The notes beneath the pieces are model-generated. The model did not search any database, was not told the DNA's origin, and saw only the letters and a program-made list of their open reading frames with translations. Positions 44,101-64,000 of a stretch of 64,000 nt of DNA are shown here, one piece after another (within the stretch, counting starts at the first letter, position 1; every line of letters begins with the position of its first letter). This stretch comes from Azolla caroliniana. Its lineage: Eukaryota > Plantae > Polypodiophyta. A program made the translations under genes and the position numbers. Where the stretch lies: assembly GCA_043228905.1 (NCBI GenBank), contig JBHGNT010000100.1, forward strand, positions 1-64,000, written 5' to 3'.

Positions 44101-47100
44101 TATCATACCTAGCGTTGCTACCTTCGATTCGCATATTTGAACACAGAAATCTGATATCACACGAGCCAGGTATGAACATTTTAATTTACTCAAGGGCTCT
44201 TCTCAACTCCCTCCTCAAGTTTGCTAATTTCGTCATGTCTCTCGACCTGAGTTTCAAAATCTTGATTTTTGAATTCTATATGATACCTAGCGTTGCTAGG
44301 TTCGATTCGCATATTTGAACACAGAAATCCGATATCACACGAGCCAGGTATGAACATTTTAATTTACTCAAGGGCTCTTCTCAACTCCCTCCTCAAGTTT
44401 GCTAATTTCTTCATATCTCCTGACCTGAGTTTCAAAATATTGATTTTCGAATTCTATATCATAGCTTGCGTTGCTACCTTCGAATCGCATATTTGAACAC
44501 AGAAATCCGATATCACACGAGCCAGGTATGAACATTTTAATTTACTCAAGGGCTCTTCTCAACTCCATCTTCATCTTTGCTAATTTCGTCATGTCTCTCG
44601 ACCTGAGTTTCAAAATCTTGATTTTTGAATTCTATATCATACCTAGCGTTGCTAGCTTCGATTCGCATATTTGAACACAGAAATCCGATATCACACGAGC
44701 CAGGTATGAACATTTTAATTTACTCAAGGGCTCTTCTCAACTCCCTCCTTAAGTTTGCTAATTTCTTCATATCTCCTGACCTGAGTTTCAAAATCTTGAA
44801 TGTTGAATTCTATATCATACCTAGCGTTGCTACCTTCGATTCGCATATTTGAACACAGAAATCTGATATCACACGAGCCAGGTATGAACATTTTAATTTA
44901 CTCAAGGGCTCTTCTCAACTCCCTCCTCAAGTATTCTAATTTCTTCATATCTCCTGACCTGAGTTTCAAAATCTTGATTTTTGAATTCTATATCATAGCT
45001 CGAGTTGCTAGCTTCGATTCGCATATTTGAACTTCAAAATCGGATATCAGACGAGCCAAGTATGAACATTTTAATTTACTCAAGCGCTCTTCTCAACTCC
45101 ATCCTCATCTTTGCTAATTTCCTCATGTCTCTCGACCTGAGTTTCAAAATCTTGATTTTTTAATTCTATATCATAGCTAGCGTTGCTAGCTTCGATTCGC
45201 ATATTTGAACACAGAAATCCGATATCACACGAGCCAGGTATGAACATTTTAATTTACTCAAGGGCTCTTCTCAACTCCCTCCTCAAGATTGCTAATTTCT
45301 TCATATCTCCTGACCTGAGTTTCAAAATCTTGATTTTTGAATTCTATATCATAGCTAGCGTTGCTAGCTTCGATTCGCATATTTGAACACAGAAATCCGA
45401 TATCACACGAACCAGGTATGAACATTTTAATTTACTCAAGGGCTCCTCTCAACTCCATCCTCAAGTTTGCTAATATTATTCATGTGTCTCGACCTGAGTT
45501 TCAAAATCTTGATTTTTGAATTCTATATCATAGCTAGCGTTGCTAGCTTCGATTCGAATATTTGAACACAGAAATCCGATATCACACGAGCCAGGTATGA
45601 ACATTTTAATTTACTCAAGGGCTCTTCTCAACTCCCTCCTTAAGTTTGCTAATTTCTTCATATCTCCTGACCTGAGTTTCAAAATCTTGATTTTTGAATT
45701 CTATATCATAGCTAGCGTTGCAAGCTTCGATTTGTATATTTGAACACAGAAATCCGATATCACACGAGCTAGGTATGAACATTTTAATTTACTCAAGGGC
45801 TCTTCTCAATTCCCTCCTCATCTTTGCTAATTTCGTCATGTCTCTCGACCTGAGTTTCAAAATCTTGATTTTTTAATTCTATATCATAGCTCGCGTTGCT
45901 AGATTCGATTCGAATATTTGAACATAAAAATCCGATATCACACGTGCCAGGTATGAACATTTTAATTTACTTAAGGGCTCTTCTCAACTCCCTCCCCAAG
46001 TTTGCTAATTTCTTCATATCTCCTGACCTGAGTTTCGAAATCTTGATTTTTGAATTCTATAGCATAGCTCGCGTTGCTAGCTTCCATTCGAATATTTTAA
46101 CACAGAAATCCAATATCACACGAGCCAGGTATGAACCTTTTAATTTACTCAAGGGCTCTTCTCAACTCCCTCCATAAGTTTGCTAATTTCTTCATATCTC
46201 CTGACCTGAGTTTCAAAATCTTGATTTTTGAATTCTATATCATAGCTCGCGTTGCTAGCTTCGATTCGAATATTTCAACTTCAAAATCCAATATCACACG
46301 AGCCAGGTATGAACATTTTAATTTACTCAAGGGCTCTTCTCAACTCCCTCCTTAAGTTTGCTAATTTCTTCATATCTCCTGACCTGAGTTTCAAAATATT
46401 GATTTTCGAATTCTATATCATAGCTTGCGTTGCTACCTTCGAATCGCATATTTGAACACAGAAATCCGATATCACACGAGCCAGGTATGAACATTTTAAT
46501 TTACTCAAGGGCTCTTCACAACTCCCTCCTCAAGTTTGCTAATTTCGTCATGTCTCTCGACCTGAGTTTCAAAATCTTGATTTTTGAATTCTATATCATA
46601 CCTAGCGTTGCTAGCTTCGATTCGCATATTTGAACACAGAAATCCGATATCACACGAGCCAGGTATGAACATTTTAATTTACTCAAGGGCTCTTCTCAAC
46701 TCCCTCCTTAAGTTTGCTAATTTCTTCATATCTCCTGACCTGAGTTTCAAAATCTTGATTTTTGAATTCTATATCATAGCTAGCGTTGCTAGCTTCGATT
46801 TGTATATTTGAACACAGAAATCCGATATCACACGAGCTAGGTATGAACATTTTAATTTACTCAAGGGCTCTTCTCAATTCCCTCCTCATCTTTGCTAATT
46901 TCGTCATGTCTCTCGACCTGAGTTTCAAAATCTTGATTTTTGAATTCTATATCATAGCTCGCGTTGCTAGATTCGATTCGAATATTTGAACATAAAAATC
47001 CGATATCACACGTGCCAGGTATGAACATTTTAATTTACTTAAGGGCTCTTCTCAACTCCCTCCCCAGGTTTGCTAATTTCTTCATATCTCCTGACCTGAG

Positions 47101-50100
47101 TTTCAAAATCTTGATTTTTGAATTCTATAGCATAGCTCGCGTTGCTAGCTTCCATTCGAATATTTTAACACAGAAATCCAATATCACACGAGCCAGGTAT
47201 GAACCTTTTAATTTACTCAAGGGCTCTTCTCAACTCCCTCCATAAGTTTGTTAATTTCTTCATATCTCCTGACCTGAGTTTCAAAATCTTGATTTTTGAA
47301 TTCTATATCATAGCTCGCGTTGCTAGCTTCGATTCGAATATTTCAACTTCAAAATCCAATATCACACGAGCCAGGTATGAACATTTTAATTTACTCAAGG
47401 GCTCCTCTCAACTCCATCCTCAAGTTTGCTAATATTATTCATGTGTCTCGACCTGAGTTTCAAAATCTTGATTTTTGAATTCTATATCATAGCTAGCGTT
47501 GCTAGCTTCGATTCGAATATTTGAACACAGAAATCCGATATCACACGAGCCAGGTATGAACATTTTAATTTACTCAAGGGCTCTTCTCAACTCCCTCCTC
47601 AAGTTTGCTGATTTCTTCATATCTCCTGACCTGAGTTTCAAAATCTTGATTTTTGAATTCTATATCATAGCTCGAGTTGCTAGGTTCGATGCGAATATTT
47701 GAACTTCAAAATCCGATATCACACGAGCCAGGTATGAACATTTTAATTTACTCTAGGGCTCCTCTCAACTCCATCCTCAAGTTTGCTAATATTATTCATG
47801 TGTCTCGACCTGAGTTTCAAAATCTTGATTTTGTAATTCTATATCATAGCTAGCGTTGCTAGCTTCGATTCGCATATTTGAACACAGAAATCCGATATCA
47901 CACGAGCCAGGTATGAACATTTTAATTTACTCAAGGGCTCTTCTCAACTCCCTCCTCAAGATTGCTAATTTCTTCATATCTCCTGACCTGAGTTTCAAAA
48001 TCTTGATTTTCTAATTCTATATCATACCTAGCGTTGCTACCTTCGATTCGCATATTTGAACACAGAAATCTGATATCACACGAGCCAGGTATGAACATTT
48101 TAATTTACTCAAGGGCTCTTCTCAACTCCCTCCTCAAGTTTGCTAATTTCGTCATGTCTCTCGACCTGAGTTTCAAAATCTTGATTTTTGAATTCTATAT
48201 GATACCTAGCGTTGCTAGGTTCGATTCGCATATTTGAACACAGAAATCCGATATCACACGAGCCAGGTATGAACATTTTAATTTACTCAAGGGCTCTTCT
48301 CAACTCCCTCCTCAAGTTTGCTAATTTCTTCATATCTCCTGACCTGAGTTTCAAAATATTGATTTTCGAATTCTATATCATAGCTTGCGTTGCTACCTTC
48401 GAATCGCATATTTGAACACAGAAATCCGATATCACACGAGCCAGGTATGAACATTTTAATTTACTCAAGGGCTCTTCTCAACTCCATCTTCATCTTTGCT
48501 AATTTCGTCATGTCTCTCGACCTGAGTTTCAAAATCTTGATTTTTGAATTCTATATCATACCTAGCGTTGCTAGCTTCGATTCGCATATTTGAACACAGA
48601 AATCCGATATCACACGAGCCAGGTATGAACATTTTAATTTACTCAAGGGCTCTTCTCAACTCCCTCCTTAAGTTTGCTAATTTCTTCATATCTCCTGACC
48701 TGAGTTTCAAAATCTTGATTTTTGAATTCTATATCATAGCTAGCGTTGCTAGCTTCGATTTGTATATTTGAACACAGAAATCCGATATCACACGAGCTAG
48801 GTATGAACATTTTAATTTACTCAAGGGCTCTTCTCAATTCCCTCCTCATCTTTGCTAATTTCGTCATGTCTCTCGACCTGAGTTTCAAAATCTTGATTTT
48901 TGAATTCTATATCATAGCTCGCGTTGCTAGATTCGATTCGAATATTTGAACATAAAAATCCGATATCACACGTGCCAGGTATGAACATTTTAATTTACTT
49001 AAGGGCTCTTCTCAACTCCCTCCCCAAGTTTGCTAATTTCTTCATATCTCCTGACCTGAGTTTCAAAATCTTGATTTTTGAATTCTATAGCATAGCTCGC
49101 GTTGCTAGCTTCCATTCGAATATTTTAACACAGAAATCCAATATCACACGAGCCAGGTATGAACCTTTTAATTTACTCAAGGGCTCTTCTCAACTCCCTC
49201 CATAAGTTTGCTAATTTCTTCATATCTCCTGACCTGAGTTTCAAAATCTTGATTTTTGAATTCTATATCATAGCTCGCGTTGCTAGCTTCGATTCGAATA
49301 TTTCAACTTCAAAATCCAATATCACACGAGCCAGGTATGAACATTTTAATTTACTCAAGGGCTCCTCTCAACTCCATCCTCAAGTTTGCTAATATTATTC
49401 ATGTGTCTCGACCTGAGTTTCAAAATCTTGATTTTTGATTTCTATATCATAGCTAGCGTTGCTAGCTTCGATTCGAATATTTGAACACAGAAATCCGATA
49501 TCACACGAGCCAGGTATGAACATTTTAATTTACTCAAGGGCTCTTCTCAACTCCCTCCTCAAATTTGCTAATTTCTTCATATCTCCTGACCTGAGTTTCA
49601 AAATCTTGATTTTTGAATTCTATATCATAGCTCGAGTTGCTAGGTTCGATGCGAATATTTGAACTTCAAAATCCGATATCACACGAGCCAGGTATGAACA
49701 TTTTAATTTACTCTAGGGCTCTTCTCAACTCCCTCCTCAAATTTGCTAATTTCTTCATATCTCCTGACCTGAGTTTCAAAATCTTGATTTTCTAATTCTA
49801 TATCATACCTAGCGTTGCTACCTTCGATTCGCATATTTGAACACAGAAATCTGATATCACACGAGCCAGGTATGAACATTTTAATTTACTCAAGGGCTCA
49901 TCTTAACTCCCTCCTCAAGTTTGCTAATTTCGTCATGTCTCTCGACCTGAGTTTCAAAATCTTGATTTTTGAATTCTATATCATAGCTAGCGTTGCTAGC
50001 TTCGATTCGCATATTTGAACACAGAAATCCGATATCACACGAGCCAGGTATGAACATTTTAATTTACTCAAGGGCTCTTCTCAACTCCCTCCTCAAGTTT

Positions 50101-51061
50101 GCTAATTTCTTCATATCTCCTGACCTGAGTTTCAAAATCTTGATTTTTGAATTCTATATCATAGCTCGAGTTGCTAGCTTCGATTCGAATATTTGAACTT
50201 CAAAATCCGATATCACACGAGCCAGGTATGAACATTTTAATTTACTCAAGGGCTCCTCTCAACTCCATCCTCAAGTTTGCTAATATTATTCATGTGTCTC
50301 GACCTGAGTTTCAAAATCTTGATTTTTGAATTCTATATCATAGCTAGCGTTGCTAGCTTCGATTCGAATATTTGAACACAGAAATCCGATATCACACGAG
50401 CCAGGTATGAACATTTTAATATACTCAAGGGCTCTTCTCAACTCCCTCCTCAAGTTTGCTAATTTCTTCATATCTCCTGACCTGAGTTTCAAAATCTTGA
50501 ATGTTGAATTCTATATCATACCTAGCGTTGCTACCTTCGATTCGCATATTTGAACACAGAAATCTGATATCACACGAGCCAGGTATGAACATTTTAATTT
50601 ACTCAAGGGCTCTTCTCAACTCCCTCCTCAAGTTTTCTAATTTCTTCATATCTCCTGACCTGAGTTTCAAAATCTTGATTTTTGAATTCTATATCATAGC
50701 TCGAGTTGCTAGCTTCGATTCGCATATTTGAACTTCAAAATCCGATATCAGACGAGCCAAGTATGAACATTTTAATTTACTCAAGCGCTCTTCTCAACTC
50801 CATCCTCATCTTTGCTAATTTCCTCATGTCTCTCGACCTGAGTTTCAAAATCGTGATTTTTGAATTCTATATCATAGCTAGCGTTGCTAGCTTCGATTCG
50901 CATATTTGAACACAGAAATCCGATATCACACGAGCCAGGTATGAACATTTTAATTTACTCAAGGGCTCTTCTCAACTCCCTCCTCAAGTTTGCTAATTTC
51001 TTCATATCTCCTGACCTGAGTTTCAAAATCTTGATTTTTGAATTCTATATCATAGCTTGCG
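17151..51061. repeat. Satellite subfamily A, domain A2 (includes 179-bp variant monomers; 6-, 7-, 11-, 19- and 22-monomer duplications)
   Basis: New marker monomers appear: GATTTGTATATTTG (first ~17574), GAACATAAAAATCCGATATCACACGTGCC (first ~17765) and a 179-bp monomer with GCTAATATTATTCATGTGTCTC (first ~18205). The left boundary is approximate. Confidence 0.8.
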
Positions 51062-52330
51062 CGATTCGCATGTTTGAACACAAAAATCCGATATCACACG
51101 AGCCAGGTATGAACATTTTAATTTACTCAAGGGCTTCTCTCAACTCACTCCTCAAATTTGGTAATTTCGTCATGTCTCGCGACCTGAGTTTCAAAATCTT
51201 GATTTTTTAACTCCATATCATAGGTAGCATTGTTAGCTTCGATTCGCATGTTTGAACACAAAAATCCGATATCACACGAGCCAGGTATGAACATTTTAAT
51301 TTAACTCATAGCTCTTCTTAACTCACTCCTCAAATTTGGTAATTTCGTCATGTCTCTCGACCTGAGTTTGAAAATCTTGATTTTTTAATTCCATATCATA
51401 GCTAGCGTTGTTAGCTTCGATTCGCATGTTTGAACACAAAATTCGGATATCACACGAGCCAGGTATGAACATTTTAATTTACTCAAGGGCTTCTCTCAAC
51501 TCACTCCTCAAATTTGGTAATCTCATCATGTCTCTCGACCTGAGTTTGAAAATCTTGATATTTTAATTCCATATCATAGCTAGCGTTGTTAGCTTCTATT
51601 CGCATGTTTGAACACAAAAATCCGATATCACACGAGCCAGGTATGAACATTTTAATTTAACTCATAGCTCTTCTTAACTCACTCCTCAAATTTAGTAATT
51701 TCGTCATGTCTCTCGACCTGAGTTTGAAAATCTTGATTTTTTAATTCTATATCATAGCTAGCGTTGTTAGCTTCGATTCGCATGTTTGAACACAAAAATC
51801 CGATATCACACGAGCCAGGTATGAACATTTTAATTTAACTCATAGCTCTTCTTAACTCACTCCTCAAATTTGGTATTTTCGTCATGTCTCTCGACCTGAG
51901 TTTCAAAATCTTGATTTTCTAATTCTATATCACAGCTAGTGTTGTTAGCTTCGATTCGCTTGTTTGAACACAAAAATCCGATATCACACGAGCCAGGTAT
52001 GAACATTTTAATTTACTCAAGGGCTTCTCTGAACTCACTCCTCAAATTTAGTAATCTCATCATGTCTTCCGACCTGAGTTTCAAAATCTTGATTTTTTAA
52101 TTCCATATCATAGCTAGCGTTGTTAGCTTCGATTCGCATGTTTGAACACAAAAATCCGATATCACACGAGCCAGGTATGAACATTTTAATTTAACTCATA
52201 GCTCTTCTTAACTCACTCCTCAAATTTGGTAATTTCGTCATGCCTCTCGACCTGAGTTTGAAAATCTTGATTTTCTAATTCTATATCACAGCTAGTGTTG
52301 TTAGCTTCGATTCGCTTGTTTGAACACAAA
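51062..52330. repeat. Satellite subfamily B island (~7 monomers)
   Basis: Carries the B diagnostics GTTGTTAGC, GCATGTTTGAACACAAAAATCC, CACTCCTCAAATTTGGTAAT and GGGCTTCTCTC or TAACTCATAGCTCTTCTT. It starts at a 10-bp deletion (51061/51062) and reverts to A within the invariant block at 52330-52381. Confidence 0.92.
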
Positions 52331-53900
52331 AATCCGATATCACACGAGCCAGGTATGAACATTTTAATTTACTCAAGGGCTCTTCTCAACTCCCTCCTCA
52401 AATTTGCTAATTTCTTCATATCTCCTGACCTGAGTTTCAAAATCTTGATTTTTGAATTCTATATCATAGCTCGAGTTGCTAGGTTCGATGCGAATATTTG
52501 AACTTCAAAATCCGATATCACACGAGCCAGGTATGAACATTTTAATTTACTCTAGGGCTCTTCTCAACTCCCTCCTCAAATTTGCTAATTTCTTCATATC
52601 TCCTGACCTGAGTTTCAAAATCTTGATTTTCTAATTCTATATCATACCTAGCGTTGCTACCTTCGATTCGCATATTTGAACACAGAAATCTGATATCACA
52701 CGAGCCAGGTATGAACATTTTAATTTACTCAAGGGCTCATCTTAACTCCCTCCTCAAGTTTGCTAATTTCGTCATGTCTCTCGACCTGAGTTTCAAAATC
52801 TTGATTTTTGAATTCTATATCATAGCTAGCGTTGCTAGCTTCGATTCGCATATTTGAACACAGAAATCCGATATCACACGAGCCAGGTATGAACATTTTA
52901 ATTTACTCAAGGGCTCTTCTCAACTCCCTCCTCAAGTTTGCTAATTTCTTCATATTTCCTGACCTGAGTTTCAAAATCTTGATTTTTGAATTCTATATCA
53001 TAGCTCGAGTTGCTAGCTTCGATTCGAATATTTGAACTTCAAAATCCGATATCACACGAGCCAGGTATGAACATTTTAATTTACTCAAGGGCTCCTCTCA
53101 ACTCCATCCTCAAGTTTGCTAATATTATTCATGTGTCTCGACCTGAGTTTCAAAATCTTGATTTTTGAATTCTATATCATAGCTAGCGTTGCTAGCTTCG
53201 ATTCGAATATTTGAACACAGAAATCCGATATCACACGAGCCAGGTATGAACATTTTAATATACTCAAGGGCTCTTCTCAACTCCCTCCTCAAGTTTGCTA
53301 ATTTCTTCATATCTCCTGACCTGAGTTTCAAAATCTTGAATGTTGAATTCTATATCATACCTAGCGTTGCTACCTTCGATTCGCATATTTGAACACAGAA
53401 ATCTGATATCACACGAGCCAGGTATGAACATTTTAATTTACTCAAGGGCTCTTCTCAACTCCCTCCTCAAGTTTTCTAATTTCTTCATATCTCCTGACCT
53501 GAGTTTCAAAATCTTGATTTTTGAATTCTATATCATAGCTCGAGTTGCTAGCTTCGATTCGCATATTTGAACTTCAAAATCCGATATCAGACGAGCCAAG
53601 TATGAACATTTTAATTTACTCAAGCGCTCTTCTCAACTCCATCCTCATCTTTGCTAATTTCCTCATGTCTCTCGACCTGAGTTTCAAAATCGTGATTTTT
53701 GAATTCTATATCATAGCTAGCGTTGCTAGCTTCGATTCGCATATTTGAACACAGAAATCCGATATCACACGAGCCAGGTATGAACATTTTAATTTACTCA
53801 AGGGCTCTTCTCAACTCCCTCCTCAAGTTTGCTAATTTCTTCATATCTCCTGACCTGAGTTTCAAAATCTTGATTTTTGAATTCTATATCATAGCTTGCG
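52331..53900. repeat. Satellite subfamily A block, duplicate of ~49492-51061
   Basis: Private variants recur at a 2839-bp offset (GGGCTCATCTT at ~49894 and ~52733; AAAATCGTGAT at ~50847 and ~53686; ORFs 49815/52654 and 50884/53723). Confidence 0.92.
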
Positions 53901-56900
53901 CGATTCGCATGTTTGAACACAAAAATCCGATATCACACGAGCCAGGTATGAACATTTTAATTTACTCAAGGGCTTCTCTCAACTCACTCCTCAAATTTGG
54001 TAATTTCGTCATGTCTCGCGACCTGAGTTTCAAAATCTTGATTTTTTAACTCCATATCATAGGTAGCATTGTTAGCTTCGATTCGCATGTTTGAACACAA
54101 AAATCCGATATCACACGAGCCAGGTATGAACATTTTAATTTAACTCATAGCTCTTCTTAACTCACTCCTCAAATTTGGTAATTTCGTCATGTCTCTCGAC
54201 CTGAGTTTGAAAATCTTGATTTTTTAATTCCATATCATAGCTAGCGTTGTTAGCTTCGATTCGCATGTTTGAACACAAAATTCGGATATCACACGAGCCA
54301 GGTATGAACATTTTAATTTACTCAAGGGCTTCTCTCAACTCACTCCTCAAATTTGGTAATCTCATCATGTCTCTCGACCTGAGTTTGAAAATCTTGATAT
54401 TTTAATTCCATATCATAGCTAGCGTTGTTAGCTTCGATTCGCATGTTTGAACACAAAAATCCGATATCACACGAGCCAGGTATGAACATTTTAATTTAAC
54501 TCATAGCTCTTCTTAACTCACTCCTCAAATTTAGTAATTTCGTCATGTCTCTCGACCTGAGTTTGAAAATCTTGATTTTTTAATTCTATATCATAGCTAG
54601 CGTTGTTAGCTTCGATTCGCATGTTTGAACACAAAAATCCGATATCACACGAGCCAGGTATGAACATTTTAATTTAACTCATAGCTCTTCTTAACTCACT
54701 CCTCAAATTTAGTAATTTCGTCATGTCTCTCGACCTGAGTTTGAAAATCTTGATTTTTTAATTCTATATCATAGCTAGCGTTGTTAGCTTCGATTCGCAT
54801 GTTTGAACACAAAAATCCGATATCACACGAGCCAGGTATGAACATTTTAATTTAACTCATAGCTCTTCTTAACTCACTCCTCAAATTTGGTATTTTCGTC
54901 ATGTCTCTCGACCTGAGTTTCAAAATCTTGATTTTCTAATTCTAAATCACAGCTAGTGTTGTTAGCTTCGATTCGCTTGTTTGAACACAAAAATCCGATA
55001 TCACACGAGCCAGGTATGAACATTTTAATTTACTCAAGGGCTTCTCTGAACTCACTCCTCAAATTTAGTAATCTCATCATGTCTCTCGACCTGAGTTTGA
55101 AAATCTTGATTTTTTAATTCCATATCATAGCTAGCGTTGTTAGCTTCGATTCGCATGTTTGAACACAAAATTCGGATATCACACGAGCCAGGTATGAACA
55201 TTTTAATTTACTCAAGGGCTTCTCTCAACTCACTCCTCAAATTTGGTAATCTCATCATGTCTCTCGACCTGAGTTTGAAAATCTTGATATTTTAATTCCA
55301 TATCATAGCTAGCGTTGTTAGCTTCGATTCGCATGTTTGAACACAAAAATCCGATATCACACGAGCCAGGTATGAACATTTTAATTTAACTCATAGCTCT
55401 TCTTAACTCACTCCTCAAATTTAGTAATTTCGTCATGTCTCTCGACCTGAGTTTGAAAATCTTGATTTTTTAATTCTATATCATAGCTAGCGTTGTTAGC
55501 TTCGATTCGCATGTTTGAACACAAAAATCCGATATCACACGAGCCAGGTATGAACATTTTAATTTAACTCATAGCTCTTCTTAACTCACTCCTCAAATTT
55601 GGTATTTTCGTCATGTCTCTCGACCTGAGTTTCAAAATCTTGATTTTCTAATTCTAAATCACAGCTAGTGTTGTTAGCTTCGATTCGCTTGTTTGAACAC
55701 AAAAATCCGATATCACACGAGCCAGGTATGAACATTTTAATTTACTCAAGGGCTTCTCTGAACTCACTCCTCAAATTTAGTAATCTCATCATGTCTTTCG
55801 ACCTGAGTTTCAAAATCTTGATTTTTTAATTCCATATCATAGCTAGCGTTGTTAGCTTCGATTCGCATGTTTGAACACAAAAATCCGATATCACACGAGC
55901 CAGGTATGAACATTTTAATTTAACTCATAGCTCTTCTTAACTCACTCCTCAAATTTGGTAATTTCGTCATGCCTCTCGACCTGAGTTTGAAAATCTTGAT
56001 TTTTTAATTCCATATCATAGCTAGCGTTGTTAGCTTCGATTCGCATGTTTGAACACAAAAATCCGATATCACACGAGCCAGGTATGAACATTTTAATTTA
56101 CTCAAGGGCTTCTCTCAACTCACTCCTCAAATTTGGTAATTTCGTCATATCTCGCGACCTGAGTTTCAAAATCTTGATTTTTTAACTCCATATCATAGCT
56201 AGCATTGTTAGCTTCGATTCGCATGTTTGAACACAAAAATCCGATATCACACGAGCCAGGTATGAACATTTTAATTTAACTCATAGCTCTTCTTAACTCA
56301 CTCCTCAAATTTGGTAATCTCATCATGTCTCTCGACCTGAGTTTAAAAATCTTGATTTTTTAATTCCATATCATAGCTAGCGTTTTTAGCTTCGATTCGC
56401 ATGTTTGAACACAAAAATCCGATATCACACGAGCCAGGTATGAACATTTTAATTTACTCAAGGGCTTCTCTCAACTCACTCCTCAAATTTGGTAATCTCA
56501 TCATGTCTCTCGACTTGAGTTTGAAAATCTTGATTTTTTAATTCCATATCATAGCTAGCGTTGTTAGCTTCGATTCGCATGTTTGAACACAACAATCCGA
56601 TCTCACACGAGCCAGGTATGAACATTTTAATTTACTCAAGGGCTTCTCTGAAATCACTCCTCAAATTTGGTAATCTCATCATGTCTTTCGACCTGAGTTT
56701 CAAAATCTTGATTTTTTAATTCCATATCATAGCTAGCGTTGTTAGCTTCGATTCGCATGTTTGAACACAAAAATCCGATATCACACGAGCCAGGTATGAA
56801 CATTTTAATTTAACTCATAGCTCTTCTTAACTCACTCCACAAATTTGGTAATTTCGTCATGTCTCTCGACCTGAGTTTGAAAATCTTGATTTTTTAATTC

Positions 56901-59900
56901 CATATCATAGCTAGCGTTGTTAGCTTCGATTCGCATGTTTGAACACAAAATTCGGATATCACACGAGCCAGGTATGAACATTTTAATTTACTCAAGGGCT
57001 TCTCTCAACTCACTCCTCAAATTTGGTAATCTCATCATGACTCTCGACCTGAGTTTGAAAATCTTGATTTTTTAATTCCATATCATAGCTAGCGTTGTTA
57101 GCTTCGATTCGCATGTTTGAACACAAAAATCCGATATCACACGAGCCAGGTATGAACATTTTAATTTAACTCATAGCTCTTCTTAACTCACTCCTCAAAT
57201 TTGGTAATTTCGTCATGTCTCTCGACCTGAGTTTGAAAATCTTGATTTTTTAATTCCATATCATAGCTAGCGTTGTTAGCTTCGATTCGCATGTTTGAAC
57301 ACAAAATTCGGATATCACACGAGCCAGGTATGAACATTTTAATTTACTCAAGGGCTTCTCTCAACTCACTCCTCAAATTTGGTAATTTCGTCATATCTCG
57401 CGACCTGAGTTTCAAAATCTTGATTTTCTAATTCTATATCACAGCTAGTGTTGTTAGCTTCGATTCGCTTGTTTGAACACAAAAATCCGATATCACACGA
57501 GCCAGGTATGAACATTTTAATTTACTCAAGGGCTTCTCTCAACTCACTCCTCAAATTTGGTAATCTCATCATGTCTCTCAACTTGAGTTTGAAAATCTTG
57601 ATTTTTTAATTCCATATCATAGCTAGCGTTGTTAGCTTCGATTCGCATGTTTGAACACAAAAATCCGATATCACACGAGCCAGGTATGAACATTTTAATT
57701 TAACTCATAGCTCTTCTTAACTCACTCCTCAAATTTGGTATTTTCGTCATGTCCCTCGACCTGAGTTTCAAAATCTTGATTTTCTAATTCTATATCATCT
57801 CTAGCGTTGTTAGCTTCGATTCGCATGTTTGAACACAAAAATCCGATATCACACGAGCCAGGTATGTACATTTTAATTTACTCAAGGGCTTCTCTCAACT
57901 CACTCCTCAAATTTGGTAATTTCGTCATATCTCGCGACCTGAGTTTCAAAATCTTGATTTTCTAATTCTATATCACAGCTAGTGTTGTTAGCTTCGATTC
58001 GCTTGTTTGAACACAAAAATCCGATATCACACGAGCCAGGTATGAACATTTTAATTTACTCAAGGGCTTCTCTCAACTCACTCCTCAAATTTGGTAATCT
58101 CATCATGTCTCTCGACTTGAGTTTGAAAATCTTGATTTTTTAATTCCATATCATAGCTAGCGTTGTTAGCTTCGATTCGCATGTTTGAACACAAAAATCC
58201 GATATCACACGAGCCAGGTATGAACATTTTAATTTACTCAAGGGCTTCTCTGAACTCACTCCTCAAATTTGGTAATCTCATCATGTCTTTCGACCTGAGT
58301 TTCAAAATCTTGATTTTTTAATTCCATATCATAGCTAGCGTTGTTAGCTTCGATTCGCATGTTTGAACACAAAAATCCGATATCACACGAGCCAGGTATG
58401 AACATTTTAATTTAACTCATAGCTCTTCTTAACTCACTCCTCAAATTTGGTATTTTCGTCATGTCTCTCGACCTGAGTTTCAAAATCTTGATTTTCTAAT
58501 TCTATATCACAGCTAGTGTTGTTAGCTTCGATTCGCTTGTTTGAACACAAAAATCCGATATCACACGAGCCAGGTATGAACATTTTAATTTACTCAAGGG
58601 CTTCTCTCAACTCACTCCTCAAATTTGGTAATCTCATCATGTCTCTCGACCTGAGTTTGAAAATCTTGATTTTTTAATTCCATATCATAGCTAGCGTTGT
58701 TAGCTTCGATTCGCATGTTTGAACACAAAAATCCGATATCACACGAGCCAGGTATGACCATTTTAATTTAACTCATAGCTCTTCTTAACTCACTCCTCAA
58801 ATTTGGTAATTTCGTCATGTCTCTCGACCTGAGTTTGAAAATCTTGATTTTTTAGTTCTATATGATAGCTAGCGTTGTTAGCTTCGATTCGCATGTTTGA
58901 ACACAAAATTCGGATATCACACGAGCCAGGTATGAACATTTTAATTTACTCAAGGGCTTCTCTGAACTCACTCCTCAAATTTGGTAATCTCATCATGTCT
59001 CTCGACCTGAGTTTGAAAATCGTGATTTTTTAACTCCATATCATAGCTAGCGTTGTTAGCTTCGATTCGCATGTTTGAACACAAAAATCCGATATCACAA
59101 GAGCCAGGTATGAACATTCTAATTTACTCAAGGGCTTCTCTCAACTCACTCCTCAAATTTGGTAATTTCGTCATGTCTCGCGACCTGAGTTTGAAAATCT
59201 TGATTTTTTAATTCCATATCATAGCTAGCGTTGTTAGCTTCGATTCGCATGTTTGAACACAAAAATCCGATATCACACGAGCCAGGTATGAACATTTTAA
59301 TTTACTCAAGGGCTTCTCTGAACTCACTCCTCAAATTTGGTAATCTCATCATGTCTTTCGACCTGAGTTTCAAAATCTTGATTTTTTAATTCCATATCAT
59401 AGCTAGCGTTGTTAGCTTCGATTCGCATGTTTGAACACAAAAATCCGATATCACACGAGCCAGGTATGAACATTTTAATTTAACTCATAGCTCTTCTTAA
59501 CTCACTCCTCAAATTTAGTAATTTCGTCATGTCTCTCGACCTGAGTTTGAAAATCTTGATTTTTTAATTCCATATCATAGCTAGCGTTGTTAGCTTCGAT
59601 TCGCATGTTTGAACACAAAATTCGGATATCACACGAGCCAGGTATGAACATTTTAATTTACTCAAGGGCTTCTCTCAACTCACTCCTCAAATTTGGTAAT
59701 CTCATCATGTCTCTCGACCTGAGTTTGAAAATCTTGATTTTTTAATTCCATATCATAGCTAGCGTTGTTAGCTTCGATTCGCATGTTTGAACACAAAAAT
59801 CCGATATCACACGAGCCAGGTATGAACATTTTAATTTAACTCATAGCTCTTCTTAACTCACTCCTCAAATTTAGTAATTTCGTCATGTCTCTCGACCTGA

Positions 59901-62900
59901 GTTTGAAAATCTTGATTTTTTAATTCTATATCATAGCTAGCGTTGTTAGCTTCGATTCGCATGTTTGAACACAAAAATCCGATATCACACGAGCCAGGTA
60001 TGAACATTTTAATTTACTCAAGGGCTTCTCTGAACTCACTCCTCAAATTTGGTAATCTCATCATGTCTTTCGACCTGAGTTTCAAAATCTTGATTTTTTA
60101 ATTCCATATCATAGCTAGCGTTGTTAGCTTCGATTCGCATGTTTGAACACAAAAATCCGATATCACACGAGCCAGGTATGAACATTTTAATTTACTCAAG
60201 GGCTTCTCTCAACTCACTCCTCAAATTTGGTAATTTCGTCATATCTCGCGACCTGAGTTTCAAAATCTTGATTTTCTAATTCTATATCACAGCTAGTGTT
60301 GTTAGCTTCGATTCGGTTGTTTGAACACAAAAATCCGATATCACACGAGCCAGGTATGAACATTTTAATTTACTCAAGGGCTTCTCTCAACTCACTCCTC
60401 AAATTTGGTAATCTCATCATGTCTCTCGACTTGAGTTTGAAAATCTTGATTTTTTAATTCCATATCATAGCTAGCGTTGTTAGCTTCGATTCGCATGTTT
60501 GAACACAAAAATCCGATATCACACGAGCCAGGTATGAACATTTTAATTTACTCAAGGGCTTCTCTGAACTCACTCCTCAAATTTGGTAATCTCATCATGT
60601 CTTTCGACCTGAGTTTCAAAATCTTGATTTTTTAATTCCATATCATAGCTAGCGTTGTTAGCTTCGATTCGCATGTTTGAACACAAAAATCCGATATCAC
60701 ACGAGCCAGGTATGAACATTTTAATTTACTCAAGGGCTTCTCTCAACTCACTCCTCAAATTTGGTAATTTCGTCATATCTCGCGACCTGAGTTTCAAAAT
60801 CTTGATTTTCTAATTCTATATCACAGCTAGTGTTGTTAGCTTCGATTCGCTTGTTTGAACACAAAAATCCGATATCACACGAGCCAGGTATGAACATTTT
60901 AATTTACTCAAGGGCTTCTCTCAACTCACTCCTCAAATTTGGTAATCTCATCATGTCTCTCGACTTGAGTTTGAAAATCTTGATTTTTTAATTCCATATC
61001 ATAGCTAGCGTTGTTAGCTTCGATTCGCATGTTTGAACACAAAAATCCGATATCACACGAGCCAGGTATGAACATTTTAATTTACTCAAGGGCTTCTCTG
61101 AACTCACTCCTCAAATTTGGTAATCTCATCATGTCTTTCGACCTGAGTTTCAAAATCTTGATTTTTTAACTCCATATCATAGCTAGCATTGTTAGCTTCG
61201 ATTCGCATGTTTGAACACGAAAATCCGATATCACACGAGCCAGGTATGAACATTTTAATTTAACTCATAGCTCTTCTTAACTCACTCCTCAAATTTGGTA
61301 TTTTCGTCATGTCTCTCGACCTGAGTTTCAAAATCTTGATTTTCTAATTCTATATCACAGCTAGTGTTGTTAGCTTCGATTCGCTTGTTTGAACACAAAA
61401 ATCCGATATCACACGAGCCAGGTATGAACATTTTAATTTACTCAAGGGCTTCTCTCAACTCACTCCTCAAATTTGGTAATCTCATCATGTCTCTCGACCT
61501 GAGTTTGAAAATCTTGATTTTTTAATTCCATATCATAGCTAGCGTTGTTAGCTTCGATTCGCATGTTTGAACACAAAAATCCGATATCACACGAGCCAGG
61601 TATGAACATTTTAATTTAACTCATAGCTCTTCTTAACTCACTCCTCAAATTTAGTAATTTCGTCATGTCTCTCGACCTGAGTTTGAAAATCTTGATTTTT
61701 TAATTCCATATCATAGCTAGCGTTGTTAGCTTCGATTCGCATGTTTGAACACAAAATTCGGATATCACACGAGCCAGGTATGAACATTTTAATTTACTCA
61801 AGGGCTTCTCTCAACTCACTCCTCAAATTTGGTAATCTCATCATGTCTCTCGACCTGAGTTTGAAAATCTTGATTTTTTAATTCCATATCATAGCTAGCG
61901 TTGTTAGCTTCGATTCGCATGTTTGAACACAAAAATCCGATATCACACGAGCCAGGTATGAACATTTTAATTTAACTCATAGCTCTTCTTAACTCACTCC
62001 TCAAATTTAGTAATTTCGTCATGTCTCTCGACCTGAGTTTGAAAATCTTGATTTTTTAATTCTATATCATAGCTAGCGTTGTTAGCTTCGATTCGCATGT
62101 TTGAACACAAAAATCCGATATCACACGAGCCAGGTATGAACATTTTAATTTACTCAAGGGCTTCTCTGAACTCACTCCTCAAATTTGGTAATCTCATCAT
62201 GTCTTTCGACCTGAGTTTCAAAATCTTGATTTTTTAATTCCATATCATAGCTAGCGTTGTTAGCTTCGATTCGCATGTTTGAACACAAAAATCCGATATC
62301 ACACGAGCCAGGTATGAACATTTTAATTTACTCAAGGGCTTCTCTCAACTCACTCCTCAAATTTGGTAATTTCGTCATATCTCGCGACCTGAGTTTCAAA
62401 ATCTTGATTTTTTAACTCCATATCATAGCTAGCATTGTTAGCTTCGATTCGCATGTTTGAACACGAAAATCCGATATCACACGAGCCAGGTATGAACATT
62501 TTAATTTAACTCATAGCTCTTCTTAACTCACTCCTCAAATTTGGTATTTTCGTCATGTCTCTCGACCTGAGTTTCAAAATCTTGATTTTCTAATTCTATA
62601 TCACAGCTAGTGTTGTTAGCTTCGATTCGCTTGTTTGAACACAAAAATCCGATATCACACGAGCCAGGTATGAACATTTTAATTAACTCAAGGGCTTCTC
62701 TCAACTCACTCCTCAAATTTGGTAATCTCATCATGTCTCTCGACCTGAGTTTCAAAATCTTGATTTTTTAATTCCATATCATAGCTAGCGTTGTTAGCTT
62801 CGATTCGCATGTTTGAACACAAAAATCCGATATCACACGAGCCAGGTATGAACATTTTAATTTACTCAAGGGCTTCTCTGAACTCACTCCTCAAATTTGG

Positions 62901-63386
62901 TAATCTCATCATGTATTTCGACCTGAGTTTCAAAATCTTGATTTTTTAATTCCATATCATAGCTAGCGTTGTTAGCTTCGATTCGCATGTTTGAACACAA
63001 AAATCCGATATCACACGAGCCAGGTATGAACATTTTAATTTACTCAAGGGCTTCTCTCAACTCACTCCTCAAATTTGGTAATTTCGTCATGTCTCGCGAC
63101 CTGAGTTTCAAAATCTTGATTTTTTAACTCCATATCATAGCTAGCATTGTTAGCTTCGATTCGCATGTTTGAACACAAAAATCCGATATCACACGAGCCA
63201 AGTATGAACATTTTAATTTACTCAAGGGCTTCTCTCAACTCACTCCTCAATTTTGGTAATTTCGTCATGTCATATCATAGCTAGCATTGTTAGCTTCGAT
63301 TCGCATGTTTGAACACAAAAATCCGATATCACACGAGCCAGGTATGAACATTTTAATTTAACTCATAGCTCTTCTTAACTCACTCC
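53901..63386. repeat. Satellite subfamily B domain (~53 monomers)
   Basis: B diagnostics throughout, with two interspersed monomer types (TACTCAAGGGCTTCTCTC and TAACTCATAGCTCTTCTT). B lacks the GAATTC (EcoRI) site common in A. Confidence 0.95.
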
Positions 63387-63457
63387 TGTCATAACTAGAC
63401 TCGAACCCATAACCTTTTGTTACACGGGTCGAGACTTTACCATTAGGTTATGAATTG
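63387..63457 (-). other. Degenerate tRNA-like unit with Pol III A box and B box at the U3 end of the LTR
   Basis: The minus strand reads CAATTCA-TAACCTAATGGTAAAGT-CTCGACCCGTGTAACAAA-AGGTT-ATGGGTTCGAGTCTAGT-TATGACA. An A-box-like TAACCTAATGG lies at 63450-63440 and a B box GGTTCGAGTCT at 63407-63397, with tRNA-canonical spacing. Acceptor and anticodon stems do not pair, so it is not a functional tRNA. Confidence 0.6.
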
Positions 63458-63509
63458 TAATTTGAAGGATATTATTTTCATTTAGGTTTTATTGGGAAAT
63501 TGATGTATA

Positions 63510-63557
63510 TTCCAGATTTCTCTGGAACATTCTAGAAACTTCAGGAGTATTCCTGAA
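63510..63557. promoter_or_regulatory. Heat-shock element array (alternating nGAAn/nTTCn, 10 in-phase units)
   Basis: TTC-ca-GAT-tt-CTC-tg-GAA-ca-TTC-ta-GAA-ac-TTC-ag-GAG-ta-TTC-ct-GAA: 7 of 10 units are perfect, including four consecutive perfect units at 63525-63542. This matches the established HSF binding consensus. Confidence 0.78.
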
Positions 63558-63562
63558 GACAC

Positions 63563-63570
63563 TGTAAAAG
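63563..63570 (+). promoter_or_regulatory. TATA-like box of the LTR promoter
   Basis: TGTAAAAG (one mismatch to TATAAAAG) lies just downstream of the HSE array and ~30 bp upstream of the transcription start predicted independently from the self-primer (63596). Confidence 0.55.
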
Positions 63571-63595
63571 GAGGCGCAAGGCATTAGTTCGAACC

Positions 63596-63607
63596 AAATC
63601 GGTTCAA
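63596..63607 (+). other. Predicted self-primer (5' end of the transcript, start of R)
   Basis: AAATCGGTTCAA is the exact reverse complement of TTGAACCGATTT at 63854-63865. Confidence 0.75.
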
Positions 63608-63676
63608 CGCCAGTCTTAAGCCTTCTAACTACTGTTGTATATCTTCCGTCATATAATACATATATCTTTCGCATCA

Positions 63677-63680
<4 letters not shown>

Positions 63681-63718
<38 letters not shown>
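63681..63718. repeat. (TC)19 microsatellite within the LTR
   Basis: Perfect 38-bp TC dinucleotide run. Confidence 0.98.
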
Positions 63719-63722
<4 letters not shown>

Positions 63723-63752
63723 ATTCCTTCTCTCAAAGTTCGACACCTCTCA

Positions 63753-63819
63753 TAGTACTAATCGTTCTCTGTCTTAGTACTATTCCCCAACAATAGTACT
63801 AATCCTTCTTTTAGTACTA
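63753..63819. repeat. Four copies of the palindrome TAGTACTA in the U5 part of the LTR
   Basis: TAGTACTA at 63753, 63775, 63794 and 63812 (spacing 22, 19, 18 bp), each followed by a short pyrimidine-rich stretch. Confidence 0.9.
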
Positions 63820-63853
63820 ATTCCTTCTCTGCCTTAATAGAGTTCCTGACAGT

Positions 63854-63865
63854 TTGAACCGATTT
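63854..63865 (+). other. Primer binding site, self-priming type
   Basis: Begins 2 nt after the LTR end (TGACA-GT-TTGAACCGATTT). It lacks the TGG start expected for pairing with a tRNA CCA end and is complementary to 63596-63607. Confidence 0.75.
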
Positions 63866-63939
63866 TGACTACTAGTCTCCCTCTTCCTTCTGTCTCCCTC
63901 CTTTCCTACTAGTCTCTTATTTCCCTTTTCCTTCATCCC

Positions 63940-64000
63940 ATGGCCACCGTTAGCGCTGAAGAGTATCAATCCGTTTTCTCGGAATTTCAATGCTTGAAAG
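63940..64000 (+). CDS. Probable gag/gag-pol N-terminus, truncated by the window edge (MATVSAEEYQSVFSEFQCLK...)
   Basis: First ATG after the PBS and leader, context CCCATGG, with 20 open codons to the window end. The product is inferred from position only. Confidence 0.5.
   Translation, partial: MATVSAEEYQSVFSEFQCLK

What the first reader, a model, noticed from the sequence alone, without database searches (positions are those of the whole stretch)
63387..64000. Candidate integrated system: a satellite-dwelling retroelement combining a Pol III-type module, a heat-shock switch and self-priming
Within 480 bp the element stacks an outward-facing tRNA-like A/B-box unit, a 10-unit HSE, a TATA-like box, a self-primer, (TC)19, palindromic U5 repeats and a self-complementary PBS. 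Each part has a separate precedent, but the combination is unknown to me. Notably, an element that seems not to need a tRNA primer carries a tRNA-like sequence at the opposite LTR end. Hypothesis: the modules let it stay inducible inside silenced satellite chromatin.
Basis: inference. Interest (0 to 1): 0.8.

Follow-up and report, generated by a model that had tools for sequence, protein, structure and literature searches.

The report
Heat-switch LTR of a self-priming chromovirus

Summary
Every listed feature is present at the stated coordinates and exceeds chance. Positions 63387-63851 are a 465-bp 5' LTR (TGTCA...TGACA). A primer-binding site, a leader and the first 20 codons of gag follow, and the LTR abuts a 63-kb array of 178-bp satellite.

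Related copies from metagenome and genome assemblies encode gag plus PR-RT-RH-INT-chromodomain. The element is therefore a Ty3/gypsy chromovirus, closest to the Tcn1/Tf1-sushi group.

- **Self-priming:** known for this clade and strongly supported here. Twelve bases that start 31-33 nt after the TATA box are the exact complement of the site 2 nt past the LTR. Five different primer/site pairs across seven families change in step.
- **Heat-shock elements:** arrays lie upstream of the TATA box in most families.
- **tRNA-derived segment:** it lies antisense at the outer edge of U3, has A/B-box geometry and is kept throughout one well-supported subclade. It is not a tRNA gene.

Each module has precedents (ONSEN, Tf1/Tcn1, Helenus/Cassandra). 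The antisense tRNA-derived unit in an autonomous element appears undescribed.

Heat induction, Pol III or TFIIIC use, and the anti-silencing idea are untested. "Satellite-dwelling" rests on one insertion.

The parts
1..63386 (.). Array of 178-bp satellite (about 355 monomers) into which, or at whose edge, the element is inserted. One truncated monomer lies near 63260-63271.
   Evidence: TRF; sequence; lag identities.
63387..63851 (+). 5' LTR, 465 bp, with terminal inverted repeats TGTCA (63387-63391) and TGACA (63847-63851).
   Evidence: It aligns over its length with the LTRs of L004 (85%), L008, L005, L006 and L002. In L008 and L002 the same start follows a polypurine tract.
63387..63452 (-). 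tRNA-derived segment read on the minus strand, facing out of the element. The B-box-like site is at 63397-63407 and the A-box-like site at 63440-63450. It is not a tRNA gene.
   Evidence: A/B pair in 6 of 3000 shuffles. No tRNA by ARAGORN or Rfam. Alignment A2 shows invariant columns concentrated in the A- and B-box columns (enrichment P = 0.0013). Cloverleaf not kept. Present in all six families of one subclade.
63510..63557 (.). Heat-shock element array of ten alternating nTTCn/nGAAn units, seven of them perfect.
   Evidence: Conserved in the family. HSE arrays sit in the same place in L017, L018, L019, L014 and L024.
63563..63570 (+). TATA-like box TGTAAAAG. Related copies have TATAAAAG.
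   Evidence: It lies 33 nt before the self-primer; the same spacing of 31-33 nt holds in 11 LTRs.
63587..63595 (+). Left arm (GTTCGAACC) of an imperfect palindrome whose right arm is the self-primer. Its role is unknown.
   Evidence: Absent in L017.
63596..63607 (+). Self-primer AAATCGGTTCAA. Position 63596 is the inferred transcription start and first base of R.
   Evidence: Exact reverse complement of 63854-63865, with 0 of 5000 shuffles reaching 12 nt. Compensatory changes in other families. The duplex forms in the minimum-energy fold with pair probability about 0.9.
63608..63622 (+). Conserved stretch CGCCAGTCTTAAGCC next to the primer. Part of it pairs with the LTR end (GAC) and with the GT before the PBS, extending the duplex.
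   Evidence: Conserved across families. Pairing appears in the predicted folds.
63650..63666 (+). AT-rich block CATATAATACATATATC, a candidate polyadenylation signal that would mark the end of R. This is inference only.
   Evidence: Conserved within the family. No test was possible.
63681..63718 (+). (TC)19 microsatellite in the inferred R/U5 region.
   Evidence: (TC)n is kept at the same place in family copies and in L018.
63753..63819 (+). Four copies of the palindromic octamer TAGTACTA in U5, specific to the window family.
   Evidence: 4 found, 0.4 expected. Copies in relatives.
63854..63865 (+). Primer-binding site TTGAACCGATTT, 2 nt after the LTR and complementary to the self-primer.
63940..64000 (+). 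Start of gag (MATVSAEEYQSVFSEFQCLK...), which runs off the window.
   Evidence: It aligns with the gag starts of L008, L005, L004 and L001. Those ORFs carry Retrotrans_gag and Ty3_capsid domains.

Best explanation
**Identity.** The region is the 5' LTR, primer-binding site, leader and first codons of gag of an autonomous Ty3/gypsy chromovirus. It belongs to the self-priming Tcn1/Tf1-sushi kind and is inserted in, or at the edge of, a 178-bp satellite array.

**How it most likely works.**
1. **Integration (inferred).** The integrase of the family ends in a classical chromodomain with an intact aromatic cage. By analogy with MAGGY, this would tether integration to H3K9-methylated heterochromatin such as satellite.
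2. **Transcription (architecture shown, induction inferred).** U3 is a heat-shock promoter. An HSE array sits just upstream of a TATA box, and Pol II would start about 32 nt downstream.
3. **Priming (complementarity, co-variation and spacing shown; cleavage inferred).** That start is the first base of a 12-nt self-primer. It folds back onto the site 2 nt past U5. RNase H would cut after base 12 to prime minus-strand DNA, as in Tf1, so no tRNA is needed.
4. **tRNA-derived unit (conservation shown, function inferred, low confidence).** The outer 65 bp of U3 is an old, antisense tRNA-derived sequence that has lost its cloverleaf but kept A/B-box positions. It is most likely a TFIIIC/Pol III-type binding unit.

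The window copy's TATA box differs at one position from its relatives, so this copy may be a weak promoter.
For: **Classification.**
- Related copies were found by an exact LTR-end/PBS pattern. They align with the window LTR at 68-85% identity.
- They encode gag and PR-RT-RH-INT-SH3_Tf2-1-Chromo.
- The chromodomain aligns with HP1/CBX1 and keeps the Y, W and Y cage residues.
- Among the 120 best homologues, the few named ones are fungal or algal and none is from a seed plant.

**Self-priming.**
- The complement is 12 nt and exact, with 0 of 5000 shuffles reaching that length.
- Five different primer/PBS pairs are seen. Four are exact 12-nt complements and L021 is 11 nt:
  - window: AAATCGGTTCAA / TTGAACCGATTT
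  - L016: ATTCCGGTTCAA / TTGAACCGGAAT
  - L017: AATTCGGATCAA / TTGATCCGAATT
  - L014 and L024: CAGTCTCGACAA / TTGTCGAGACTG
  - L021: ACTCTTGTCAA / TTGACAAGAGT
- The primer begins 31-33 nt after the TATA box in 11 LTRs.
- The duplex forms 12 of 12 pairs in the minimum-energy fold, with pair probability 0.89-0.96, in six RNAs.
- Neumann et al. 2019 predict self-priming for the Tcn1 clade (PMC6317226).

**Heat-shock elements.** LTRs hold 3-22 perfect dimers per roughly 0.3-0.7 kb, against 0.7-2.4 per kb inside the elements.

**tRNA-derived unit.**
Against: - Only 614 bp of the element are in the window. The coding capacity, 3' LTR and target-site duplication of this copy are unseen, and classification rests on relatives that are 68-85% identical in the LTR.
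- The transcription start is inferred from spacing, not mapped.
- No expression, HSF-binding or Pol III data exist.
- L016 has the same primer architecture but no HSEs, so HSEs are not obligatory.
- L018 shows no PBS after its LTR.
- Clade membership was not tested against labelled reference RT sequences.
- The host organism is unknown.
Confidence: 0.75

Rival explanations
1. The tRNA-derived A/B-box unit binds TFIIIC and acts as a heterochromatin barrier at the outer LTR edge. This keeps the adjacent heat-shock promoter inducible inside silenced satellite, so the modules work as one adaptation to life in heterochromatin.
For: - The unit lies exactly between the flanking DNA and the HSE/TATA block.
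- Its invariant positions are concentrated in the A- and B-box columns while the stems have decayed.
- It has been kept through a whole subclade while the rest of U3 became unalignable.
- The family's chromodomain should send copies into heterochromatin (PMC3350952).
- From general knowledge, tRNA genes and B boxes act as barriers in yeasts.
Against: - No functional data of any kind exist.
- The sister group (L014, L021, L024) has equally strong or stronger HSE arrays and no tRNA-like unit, so heat inducibility does not require it.
- L016 has the unit but no HSEs.
- Only one insertion in satellite is known.
Confidence: 0.2
2. The modules are incidental. The HSE-like run is a short tandem-repeat expansion of TTCTAGAA-type units. 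The tRNA-like piece is a dead relic of an old tRNA or SINE capture, kept only by descent or by constraints on the LTR end. Neither has a regulatory role.
For: - HSE blocks in L018, L024 and L006 are visibly tandem duplications.
- The cloverleaf is not kept: 47.5% of cells paired against 45.8% in shuffles.
- No tRNA is called at default thresholds.
- Kojima notes that many LTRs contain tRNA-like fragments (PMC10886601).
Against: - The 5-bp alternating phase of GAA/TTC is kept in families whose LTRs no longer align. The arrays always lie directly upstream of the TATA box.
- They are several-fold enriched over the internal sequence.
- Ten of the 15 invariant columns of the tRNA-like alignment fall in the 22 A/B-box columns (P = 0.0013). 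This is not what neutral decay predicts.
Confidence: 0.15
3. The site after the LTR is primed by a cellular tRNA or tRNA fragment rather than by the element's own 5' end. The complement of the PBS (AAATCGGTTCAA) resembles a T-arm. The match within the LTR would then serve another purpose, such as a leader stem.
For: - The primer region contains a perfect B-box consensus, GGTTCAACGCC, at 63601.
- The sister-group families carry a tRNA-iMet-type PBS remnant a few bases further downstream.
Against: - The PBS changes together with the LTR sequence in five different versions, including CAGTCTCGACAA and ACTCTTGTCAA, which are not T-arm-like.
- The matching LTR sequence always starts at the distance from the TATA box expected for the transcript's first base.
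- No tRNA 3' end complement lies next to the LTR in the window family.
Confidence: 0.05

Closest known systems
Tcn1-clade chromoviruses of non-seed plants and fungi, and the Tf1/sushi group (Tf1, MAGGY)
   Same: - gag plus PR-RT-RH-INT with a classical group-I chromodomain.
- No tRNA-type PBS next to the LTR.
- The first bases of the transcript are complementary to the site after U5 (self-priming).
- The nearest named relatives are fungal and algal.
- Tcn1-6 of Cryptococcus sit in centromeres (PMC9942834), and the MAGGY chromodomain targets H3K9me (PMC3350952).
   Different: - Placement in the clade was not tested against labelled references.
- Novikova 2010 found no self-primer in SM-Tcn1 (PMC2864245).
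- The LTRs here carry long HSE arrays and an antisense tRNA-derived unit. The papers I read do not mention either for this clade.
ONSEN (ATCOPIA78) and other heat-responsive COPIA elements of Brassicaceae
   Same: Heat-shock elements in U3 of the LTR upstream of the transcription start. This gives a plausible HSF-driven burst of transcription under heat.
   Different: - ONSEN is Ty1/copia from a seed plant, with a few HSE motifs. From my own knowledge it is tRNA-primed; the papers I read do not say.
- Here the element is a Ty3/gypsy chromovirus that self-primes, with arrays of 10 or more units in several families.
- No experiment supports heat induction here.
Helenus and Cassandra (TRIMp3: small LTR elements with tRNA- or 5S-derived Pol III modules in their LTRs; PMC10886601)
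   Same: [quoted passage not shown] One Helenus family is known from Selaginella.
   Different: - Helenus and Cassandra are non-autonomous and at most about 1.3 kb. Their Pol III module is proposed to drive the element's own RNA.
- Here the element is autonomous at about 5.5 kb and has its own Pol II TATA/HSE promoter.
- The tRNA-derived unit faces away from the element at the outer LTR edge.

Membership tests
LTR retrotransposon | LTR bounded by TG...CA with short inverted repeats | tested here: met
   TGTCA at 63387 and TGACA at 63847-63851. The same ends occur in relatives.
LTR retrotransposon | Two LTRs and a target-site duplication | not testable with these tools
   The window ends 149 bp after the 5' LTR. 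L002 shows both LTRs of a related copy.
Ty3/gypsy chromovirus | Domain order PR-RT-RH-INT followed by a chromodomain | tested here: met
   Pfam on L002 pol, and the same in L004 and L014-L024. This is shown in relatives, not in the window copy itself.
Tcn1 clade / Tf1-sushi group | Group-I (classical) chromodomain with an aromatic cage | tested here: met
   Alignment to CBX1/HP1 keeps Y, W and Y. The criterion is from PMC3350952.
Tcn1 clade / Tf1-sushi group | Self-priming: the transcript's 5' end is complementary to the PBS | tested here: met
   Searches show exact complement, five co-varying versions and constant TATA spacing. The transcript start itself is inferred.
Tcn1 clade / Tf1-sushi group | RT/INT groups with reference Tcn1 or Tf1 sequences in a tree | not tested
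   No labelled reference sequences were at hand. The only indirect evidence is that the named hits are Cunninghamella, Microbotryum and Closterium, with no seed plant among the top 120.
Heat-shock (HSF-dependent) promoter | At least three alternating nGAAn units close to the TATA box | tested here: met
   Ten units, seven perfect, ending 6 bp before the TATA-like box.
Heat-shock (HSF-dependent) promoter | HSF binding and heat-induced transcription | not testable with these tools
   No expression or binding data.
tRNA gene | Cloverleaf recognised by ARAGORN or the Rfam tRNA model | tested here: not met
   No call at default settings in the window or in eight loci. The best case is L016, at 15.8 bits against a gathering score of 29, and found by ARAGORN only at 80% thresholds. 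Cloverleaf pairing is no better than in shuffles.
Pol III type-2 promoter (SINE-like or Helenus-like module) | A box and B box in tRNA-like order and spacing | tested here: met
   The A box has 2 mismatches and the B box 1, with starts 43 nt apart; 6 of 3000 shuffles match this. Invariant columns are concentrated in the A- and B-box columns.
Pol III type-2 promoter (SINE-like or Helenus-like module) | Module oriented to transcribe the element, which is short and non-autonomous (TRIMp3 definition) | tested here: not met
   The unit is antisense and faces outward, and relatives are autonomous at about 5.5 kb.
Pol III type-2 promoter (SINE-like or Helenus-like module) | Pol III/TFIIIC occupancy and a transcript | not testable with these tools
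   No data.

The most novel reading that the evidence does not exclude
An autonomous, heterochromatin-seeking chromovirus lineage has kept, since the origin of a whole subclade, an outward-facing tRNA-derived TFIIIC/Pol III unit at the edge of its LTR. The unit shields or primes the neighbouring heat-shock promoter, so copies buried in satellite stay inducible by heat. This would be the first Pol III-type module with a function in a full-size LTR retrotransposon.
Probability: 0.2. Interest if true: 0.75.

Novelty: new variant of a known kind. Interest (0 to 1): 0.5.

Why it matters
- **Self-priming evidence.** The data give unusually clean comparative evidence for Tf1-type self-priming outside fungi and vertebrates: five co-varying primer/site pairs and a fixed distance from the TATA box. 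Until now this was only a database-scale prediction for the Tcn1 clade.
- **Convergent heat-shock promoters.** Heat-shock promoters in LTRs are not confined to ONSEN-type copia elements. They appear, with much longer arrays, in a separate superfamily whose integrase should send copies into heterochromatin.
- **A testable model for the tRNA-derived unit.** If the antisense unit binds TFIIIC or Pol III, the family would be a natural model for how a mobile element keeps a promoter usable inside silent chromatin. It would also extend the small-RNA-gene-derived modules known from miniature elements to autonomous ones.

Tried and rejected
**Attempts to name the host organism all failed.**
- Exact look-ups of satellite and LTR ORFs in the assembly index found nothing.
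- Satellite sequence strings, and a search for a 178-bp centromeric satellite in bryophytes, found nothing in the paper library.
- The accession GCA_017884025 is not mentioned in any paper of the library.
- The gene flanking L015 has only unnamed repetitive relatives.
- The host is therefore only inferred to be a non-seed plant, most likely a bryophyte, and a fungus is not excluded.

**Other searches that led nowhere.**
- Two scans of viral contigs found nothing.
- L003, L007, L009, L011 and L012 showed no other similarity to the element and were treated as chance 20-mer hits.

**Ideas tested and rejected.**
- A real tRNA gene is rejected.
- RNAalifold on the tRNA-like alignment gave a weak long-range hairpin instead of a cloverleaf. 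I give it no weight.
- The Rfam hits to mir-145, snoZ178 and Fibrobacter-1 are far below threshold and come from HSE palindromes or (TC)n.
- Higher-order periodicity in the satellite was weak and was not pursued.

**Constraints observed.**
- No contig looked human.
The majority line that the aligner prints was not used.
Full report
**1. What is in the window**

Positions 1-63271 are a tandem array of a 178-bp unit: 355 copies, 92% matching. The array continues with one truncated monomer up to 63386.

At 63387 the satellite stops in mid-monomer and a different sequence begins. It starts TGTCA and, 465 bp later, ends TGACA at 63847-63851. This is the terminal inverted repeat of an LTR.

After the LTR come GT, then the site TTGAACCGATTT (63854-63865), then a pyrimidine-rich leader. 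An ATG at 63940 opens a reading frame (MATVSAEEYQSVFSEFQCLK) that runs off the window.

**2. Check of each listed feature**

- **HSE array.** It has ten units in 5-bp phase at 63510-63557, seven of them perfect. None of 2000 dinucleotide-preserving shuffles of the LTR reached seven perfect units. The 63 kb of satellite has no perfect three-unit HSE.
- **TATA-like box.** TGTAAAAG lies at 63563.
- **Self-primer.** AAATCGGTTCAA at 63596-63607 is the exact reverse complement of the site after the LTR. None of 5000 shuffles gave 12 nt; the maximum was 11.
- **(TC)19.** It lies at 63681-63718.
- **TAGTACTA.** The palindrome occurs four times in 67 bp and nowhere else in the window, against 0.4 expected.
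- **tRNA-like unit.** On the minus strand the first 65 bp of the LTR hold a B-box-like GGTTCGAGTCT and an A-box-like TAACCTAATGG, with starts 43 nt apart as in a tRNA gene. Such a pair arose in 6 of 3000 shuffles.
- **Not a tRNA gene.** ARAGORN and the Rfam tRNA model do not call a tRNA in the window copy.

**3. What the element is**

One scan of metagenome contigs with the 20-mer across the LTR end and the site after it returned 13 loci. Eight are relatives: L004, L008, L005, L002, L010, L006, L001 and L013. Their identity to the window's 614 bp is 68-85%. The other five show no other similarity.

L002 is a nearly complete copy. Its two ORFs carry these domains:
- Retrotrans_gag, Ty3_capsid and a zinc knuckle;
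- protease, RVT_1, RNase H, integrase zinc finger and core, SH3_Tf2-1 and Chromo.

L004, the closest LTR match, carries gag and pol as well. The family is therefore a Ty3/gypsy chromovirus.

The chromodomain aligns with HP1/CBX1 and keeps the three cage residues Y, W and Y. That makes it the classical group-I type. Among plant elements this type is reported for Tcn1-like elements of mosses and lycophytes, plus green-algal Chlamyvir elements and two Galadriel-like elements of Selaginella. It is also the type that directs MAGGY into H3K9-methylated chromatin (PMC3350952).

A search of 5.8 billion proteins found thousands of relatives, nearly all from unnamed metagenome or read-archive assemblies. 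The few named ones among the best 120 are from Cunninghamella, Microbotryum and Closterium, and none is from a seed plant. This pattern fits the Tcn1 clade, which groups with fungal elements (PMC2864245, PMC6317226). I could not run a tree against labelled references.

I could not name the host. A non-seed plant, most likely a bryophyte, is my inference.

**4. Self-priming**

Neumann et al. 2019 predict self-priming for the Tcn1 clade, and for TAR copia elements. To test it independently of my search pattern, I fetched more distant families through their pol proteins: L014-L026, at 55-74% pol identity.

In each family that shows both regions, 11-13 nt starting 2 nt after the LTR's ...ACA are the exact complement of a sequence inside the LTR. 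The two sequences change together:

| Family | Self-primer | Site after the LTR |
|---|---|---|
| window | AAATCGGTTCAA | TTGAACCGATTT |
| L016 | ATTCCGGTTCAA | TTGAACCGGAAT |
| L017 | AATTCGGATCAA | TTGATCCGAATT |
| L014, L024 | CAGTCTCGACAA | TTGTCGAGACTG |
| L021 | ACTCTTGTCAA | TTGACAAGAGT |

L008, L005 and L002 (3' LTR) keep the pairing through a G-U pair.

In all 11 LTRs examined the primer's first base lies 31-33 nt after the first T of the TATA box. This is the usual distance to a Pol II start.

When RNAs were started at that base, the 12-bp duplex was in the minimum-energy structure in all six tested, with pair probability 0.89-0.96. In five of the six, all except L014, the fold extends the duplex by pairs between the stretch next to the primer and the LTR end.

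This is the Tf1 arrangement. The steps not shown are the actual start site and the RNase H cut.

**5. Heat-shock elements**

The HSE block is conserved in every family copy that includes U3, and L006 carries a 30-bp duplication of it.

In families whose LTRs no longer align with the window's, HSE arrays again lie directly upstream of the TATA box: L017, L018, L019, L014 and L024. L024 has 20 perfect dimers, and its best in-phase run has 13 perfect units.

LTRs hold 3-22 perfect dimers in about 0.3-0.7 kb, against 0.7-2.4 per kb in the internal parts of the same elements.

Two families differ. L016 has none and carries three CCAAATGGCG-type repeats instead. L021 has only two dimers, plus CACGTGGC motifs.

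A stress-responsive U3 is therefore the rule, and a heat-shock version is the commonest form. ONSEN is the known precedent for HSF-driven LTRs (PMC9942834, PMC13602373). I found no paper describing HSEs in moss or Tcn1-like LTRs. That is a limit of the library and does not prove novelty.

**6. The tRNA-derived unit**

The same kind of sequence, antisense and within the first 100 bp of U3, is present in the window family and in L016, L017, L018, L019 and L020.

In the alignment of ten copies the 15 invariant columns are not spread evenly. Ten fall in the 22 A- and B-box columns (P = 0.0013). By my own mapping of columns to tRNA positions, which is approximate because the register shifts by a base between copies, they include the positions that correspond to U8, A14, G18, G19, G53, T54, T55, A58 and C61.

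The stems are not kept:
- With a cloverleaf imposed, 47.5% of cells pair, against 45.8% in shuffles. Only the T arm holds, at 74%.
- The best single copy (L016) reaches 15.8 bits against a gathering score of 29 with the Rfam tRNA model. ARAGORN finds it only at 80% of its thresholds.

On a pol tree the six families that carry the unit form one group (support 100/99). The three without it (L014, L021, L024) form the neighbouring group (100/100). This fits a single acquisition followed by long retention.

The pattern of boxes kept and cloverleaf lost is the one described for SINE heads and for Helenus, the miniature LTR elements with tRNA-like LTR sequences (PMC10886601). Here, however, the element is autonomous and has its own Pol II promoter, and the unit points outward.

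Binding of TFIIIC, with or without Pol III transcription into the flank, is the most economical reading. I hold it at low confidence.

**7. The integrated hypothesis**

The geometry fits it: flank, then the A/B-box unit, then HSEs, TATA box and start. The chromodomain gives a reason for copies to land in heterochromatin.

The comparative data also show that the modules are separable. The sister group has HSE arrays and no tRNA-derived unit, and L016 has the unit and no HSEs.

None of the related copies I recovered is flanked by this satellite. They probably come from other species, so this says little either way.

The window copy's TATA box differs at one position from its relatives, so this copy may not be the best one to test.

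**8. Verdict**

- The identity of the element is settled at the level of a self-priming chromovirus of the Tcn1/Tf1-sushi kind.
- The heat-shock promoter is well supported as architecture.
- The tRNA-derived unit is real, conserved and not a tRNA.
- Its function, and the anti-silencing system built on it, remain hypotheses.

Each module has a precedent. The antisense tRNA-derived unit in an autonomous element, and its combination with the other modules, is a new variant of known kinds.

**Constraints.** Nothing here looked human. No spliced models were used.

Noticed in passing
L014:455-466; L021 about 780-790; L024 about 7400-7410: In the sister-group families, a tRNA-iMet-type primer-binding motif lies about 10-15 nt downstream of the self-priming site: TGGTATCAGAGC in L014 and TATCAGAGC in L021 and L024. 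It could be a relic of tRNA priming or a second, alternative primer site. It is absent in the window family.
   Followed up: partly
window 63587-63607; also L016, L014, L021, L024: The self-primer is the right arm of an imperfect palindrome whose left arm lies just upstream of the inferred start, in U3. The palindrome recurs in families with quite different primer sequences but not in L017. In the RNA it could form only at the 3' LTR copy, where it might mask the second copy of the primer. This is unexplained.
   Followed up: partly
window 63601-63611: GGTTCAACGCC, overlapping the self-primer on the plus strand, matches the B-box consensus perfectly. This could be chance or a hint at where the self-primer came from.
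   Followed up: no
window 63753-63819: Four TAGTACTA palindromes (GTAC core) lie in U5 and are specific to the window family. Candidate roles are RNA dimerisation or binding of SBP-type factors. Neither was tested.
   Followed up: partly
L014:5491-5907; L021:5578-6000; L024:6521-6871: The sister-group families have an extra ORF of 116-140 aa between pol and the 3' LTR, with no Pfam match.
   Followed up: partly
L016:4170-4260; L021 about 400-550: In place of HSEs, U3 of L016 has three GTACGCCAAATGGCG-type repeats and U3 of L021 has CACGTGGC (G-box/ABRE-like) motifs. This suggests that stress modules are swapped between families.
   Followed up: no
L020:4655-4764: The LTR start has two tandem copies of the B-box-like AGATTCGAAC. 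This is a partial duplication of the tRNA-derived unit.
   Followed up: no
L018:5220-5300: No primer-binding site follows the LTR in this contig, although the LTR has the self-primer. It may be a deleted copy or an assembly artefact.
   Followed up: no
window 63131-63387: The satellite monomer before the insertion is truncated by about 38 bp near 63260-63271.
   Followed up: partly
window 54001-63260: In the last 9 kb of the array, identity is slightly higher at lags of 356, 534 and 1780 bp than at 178 bp. This hints at weak higher-order repeats.
   Followed up: partly
L015:6243-8631: A long ORF of about 800-920 aa on the minus strand next to the element has no Pfam domain and only unnamed multi-copy relatives. 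It is probably another repeat.
   Followed up: partly
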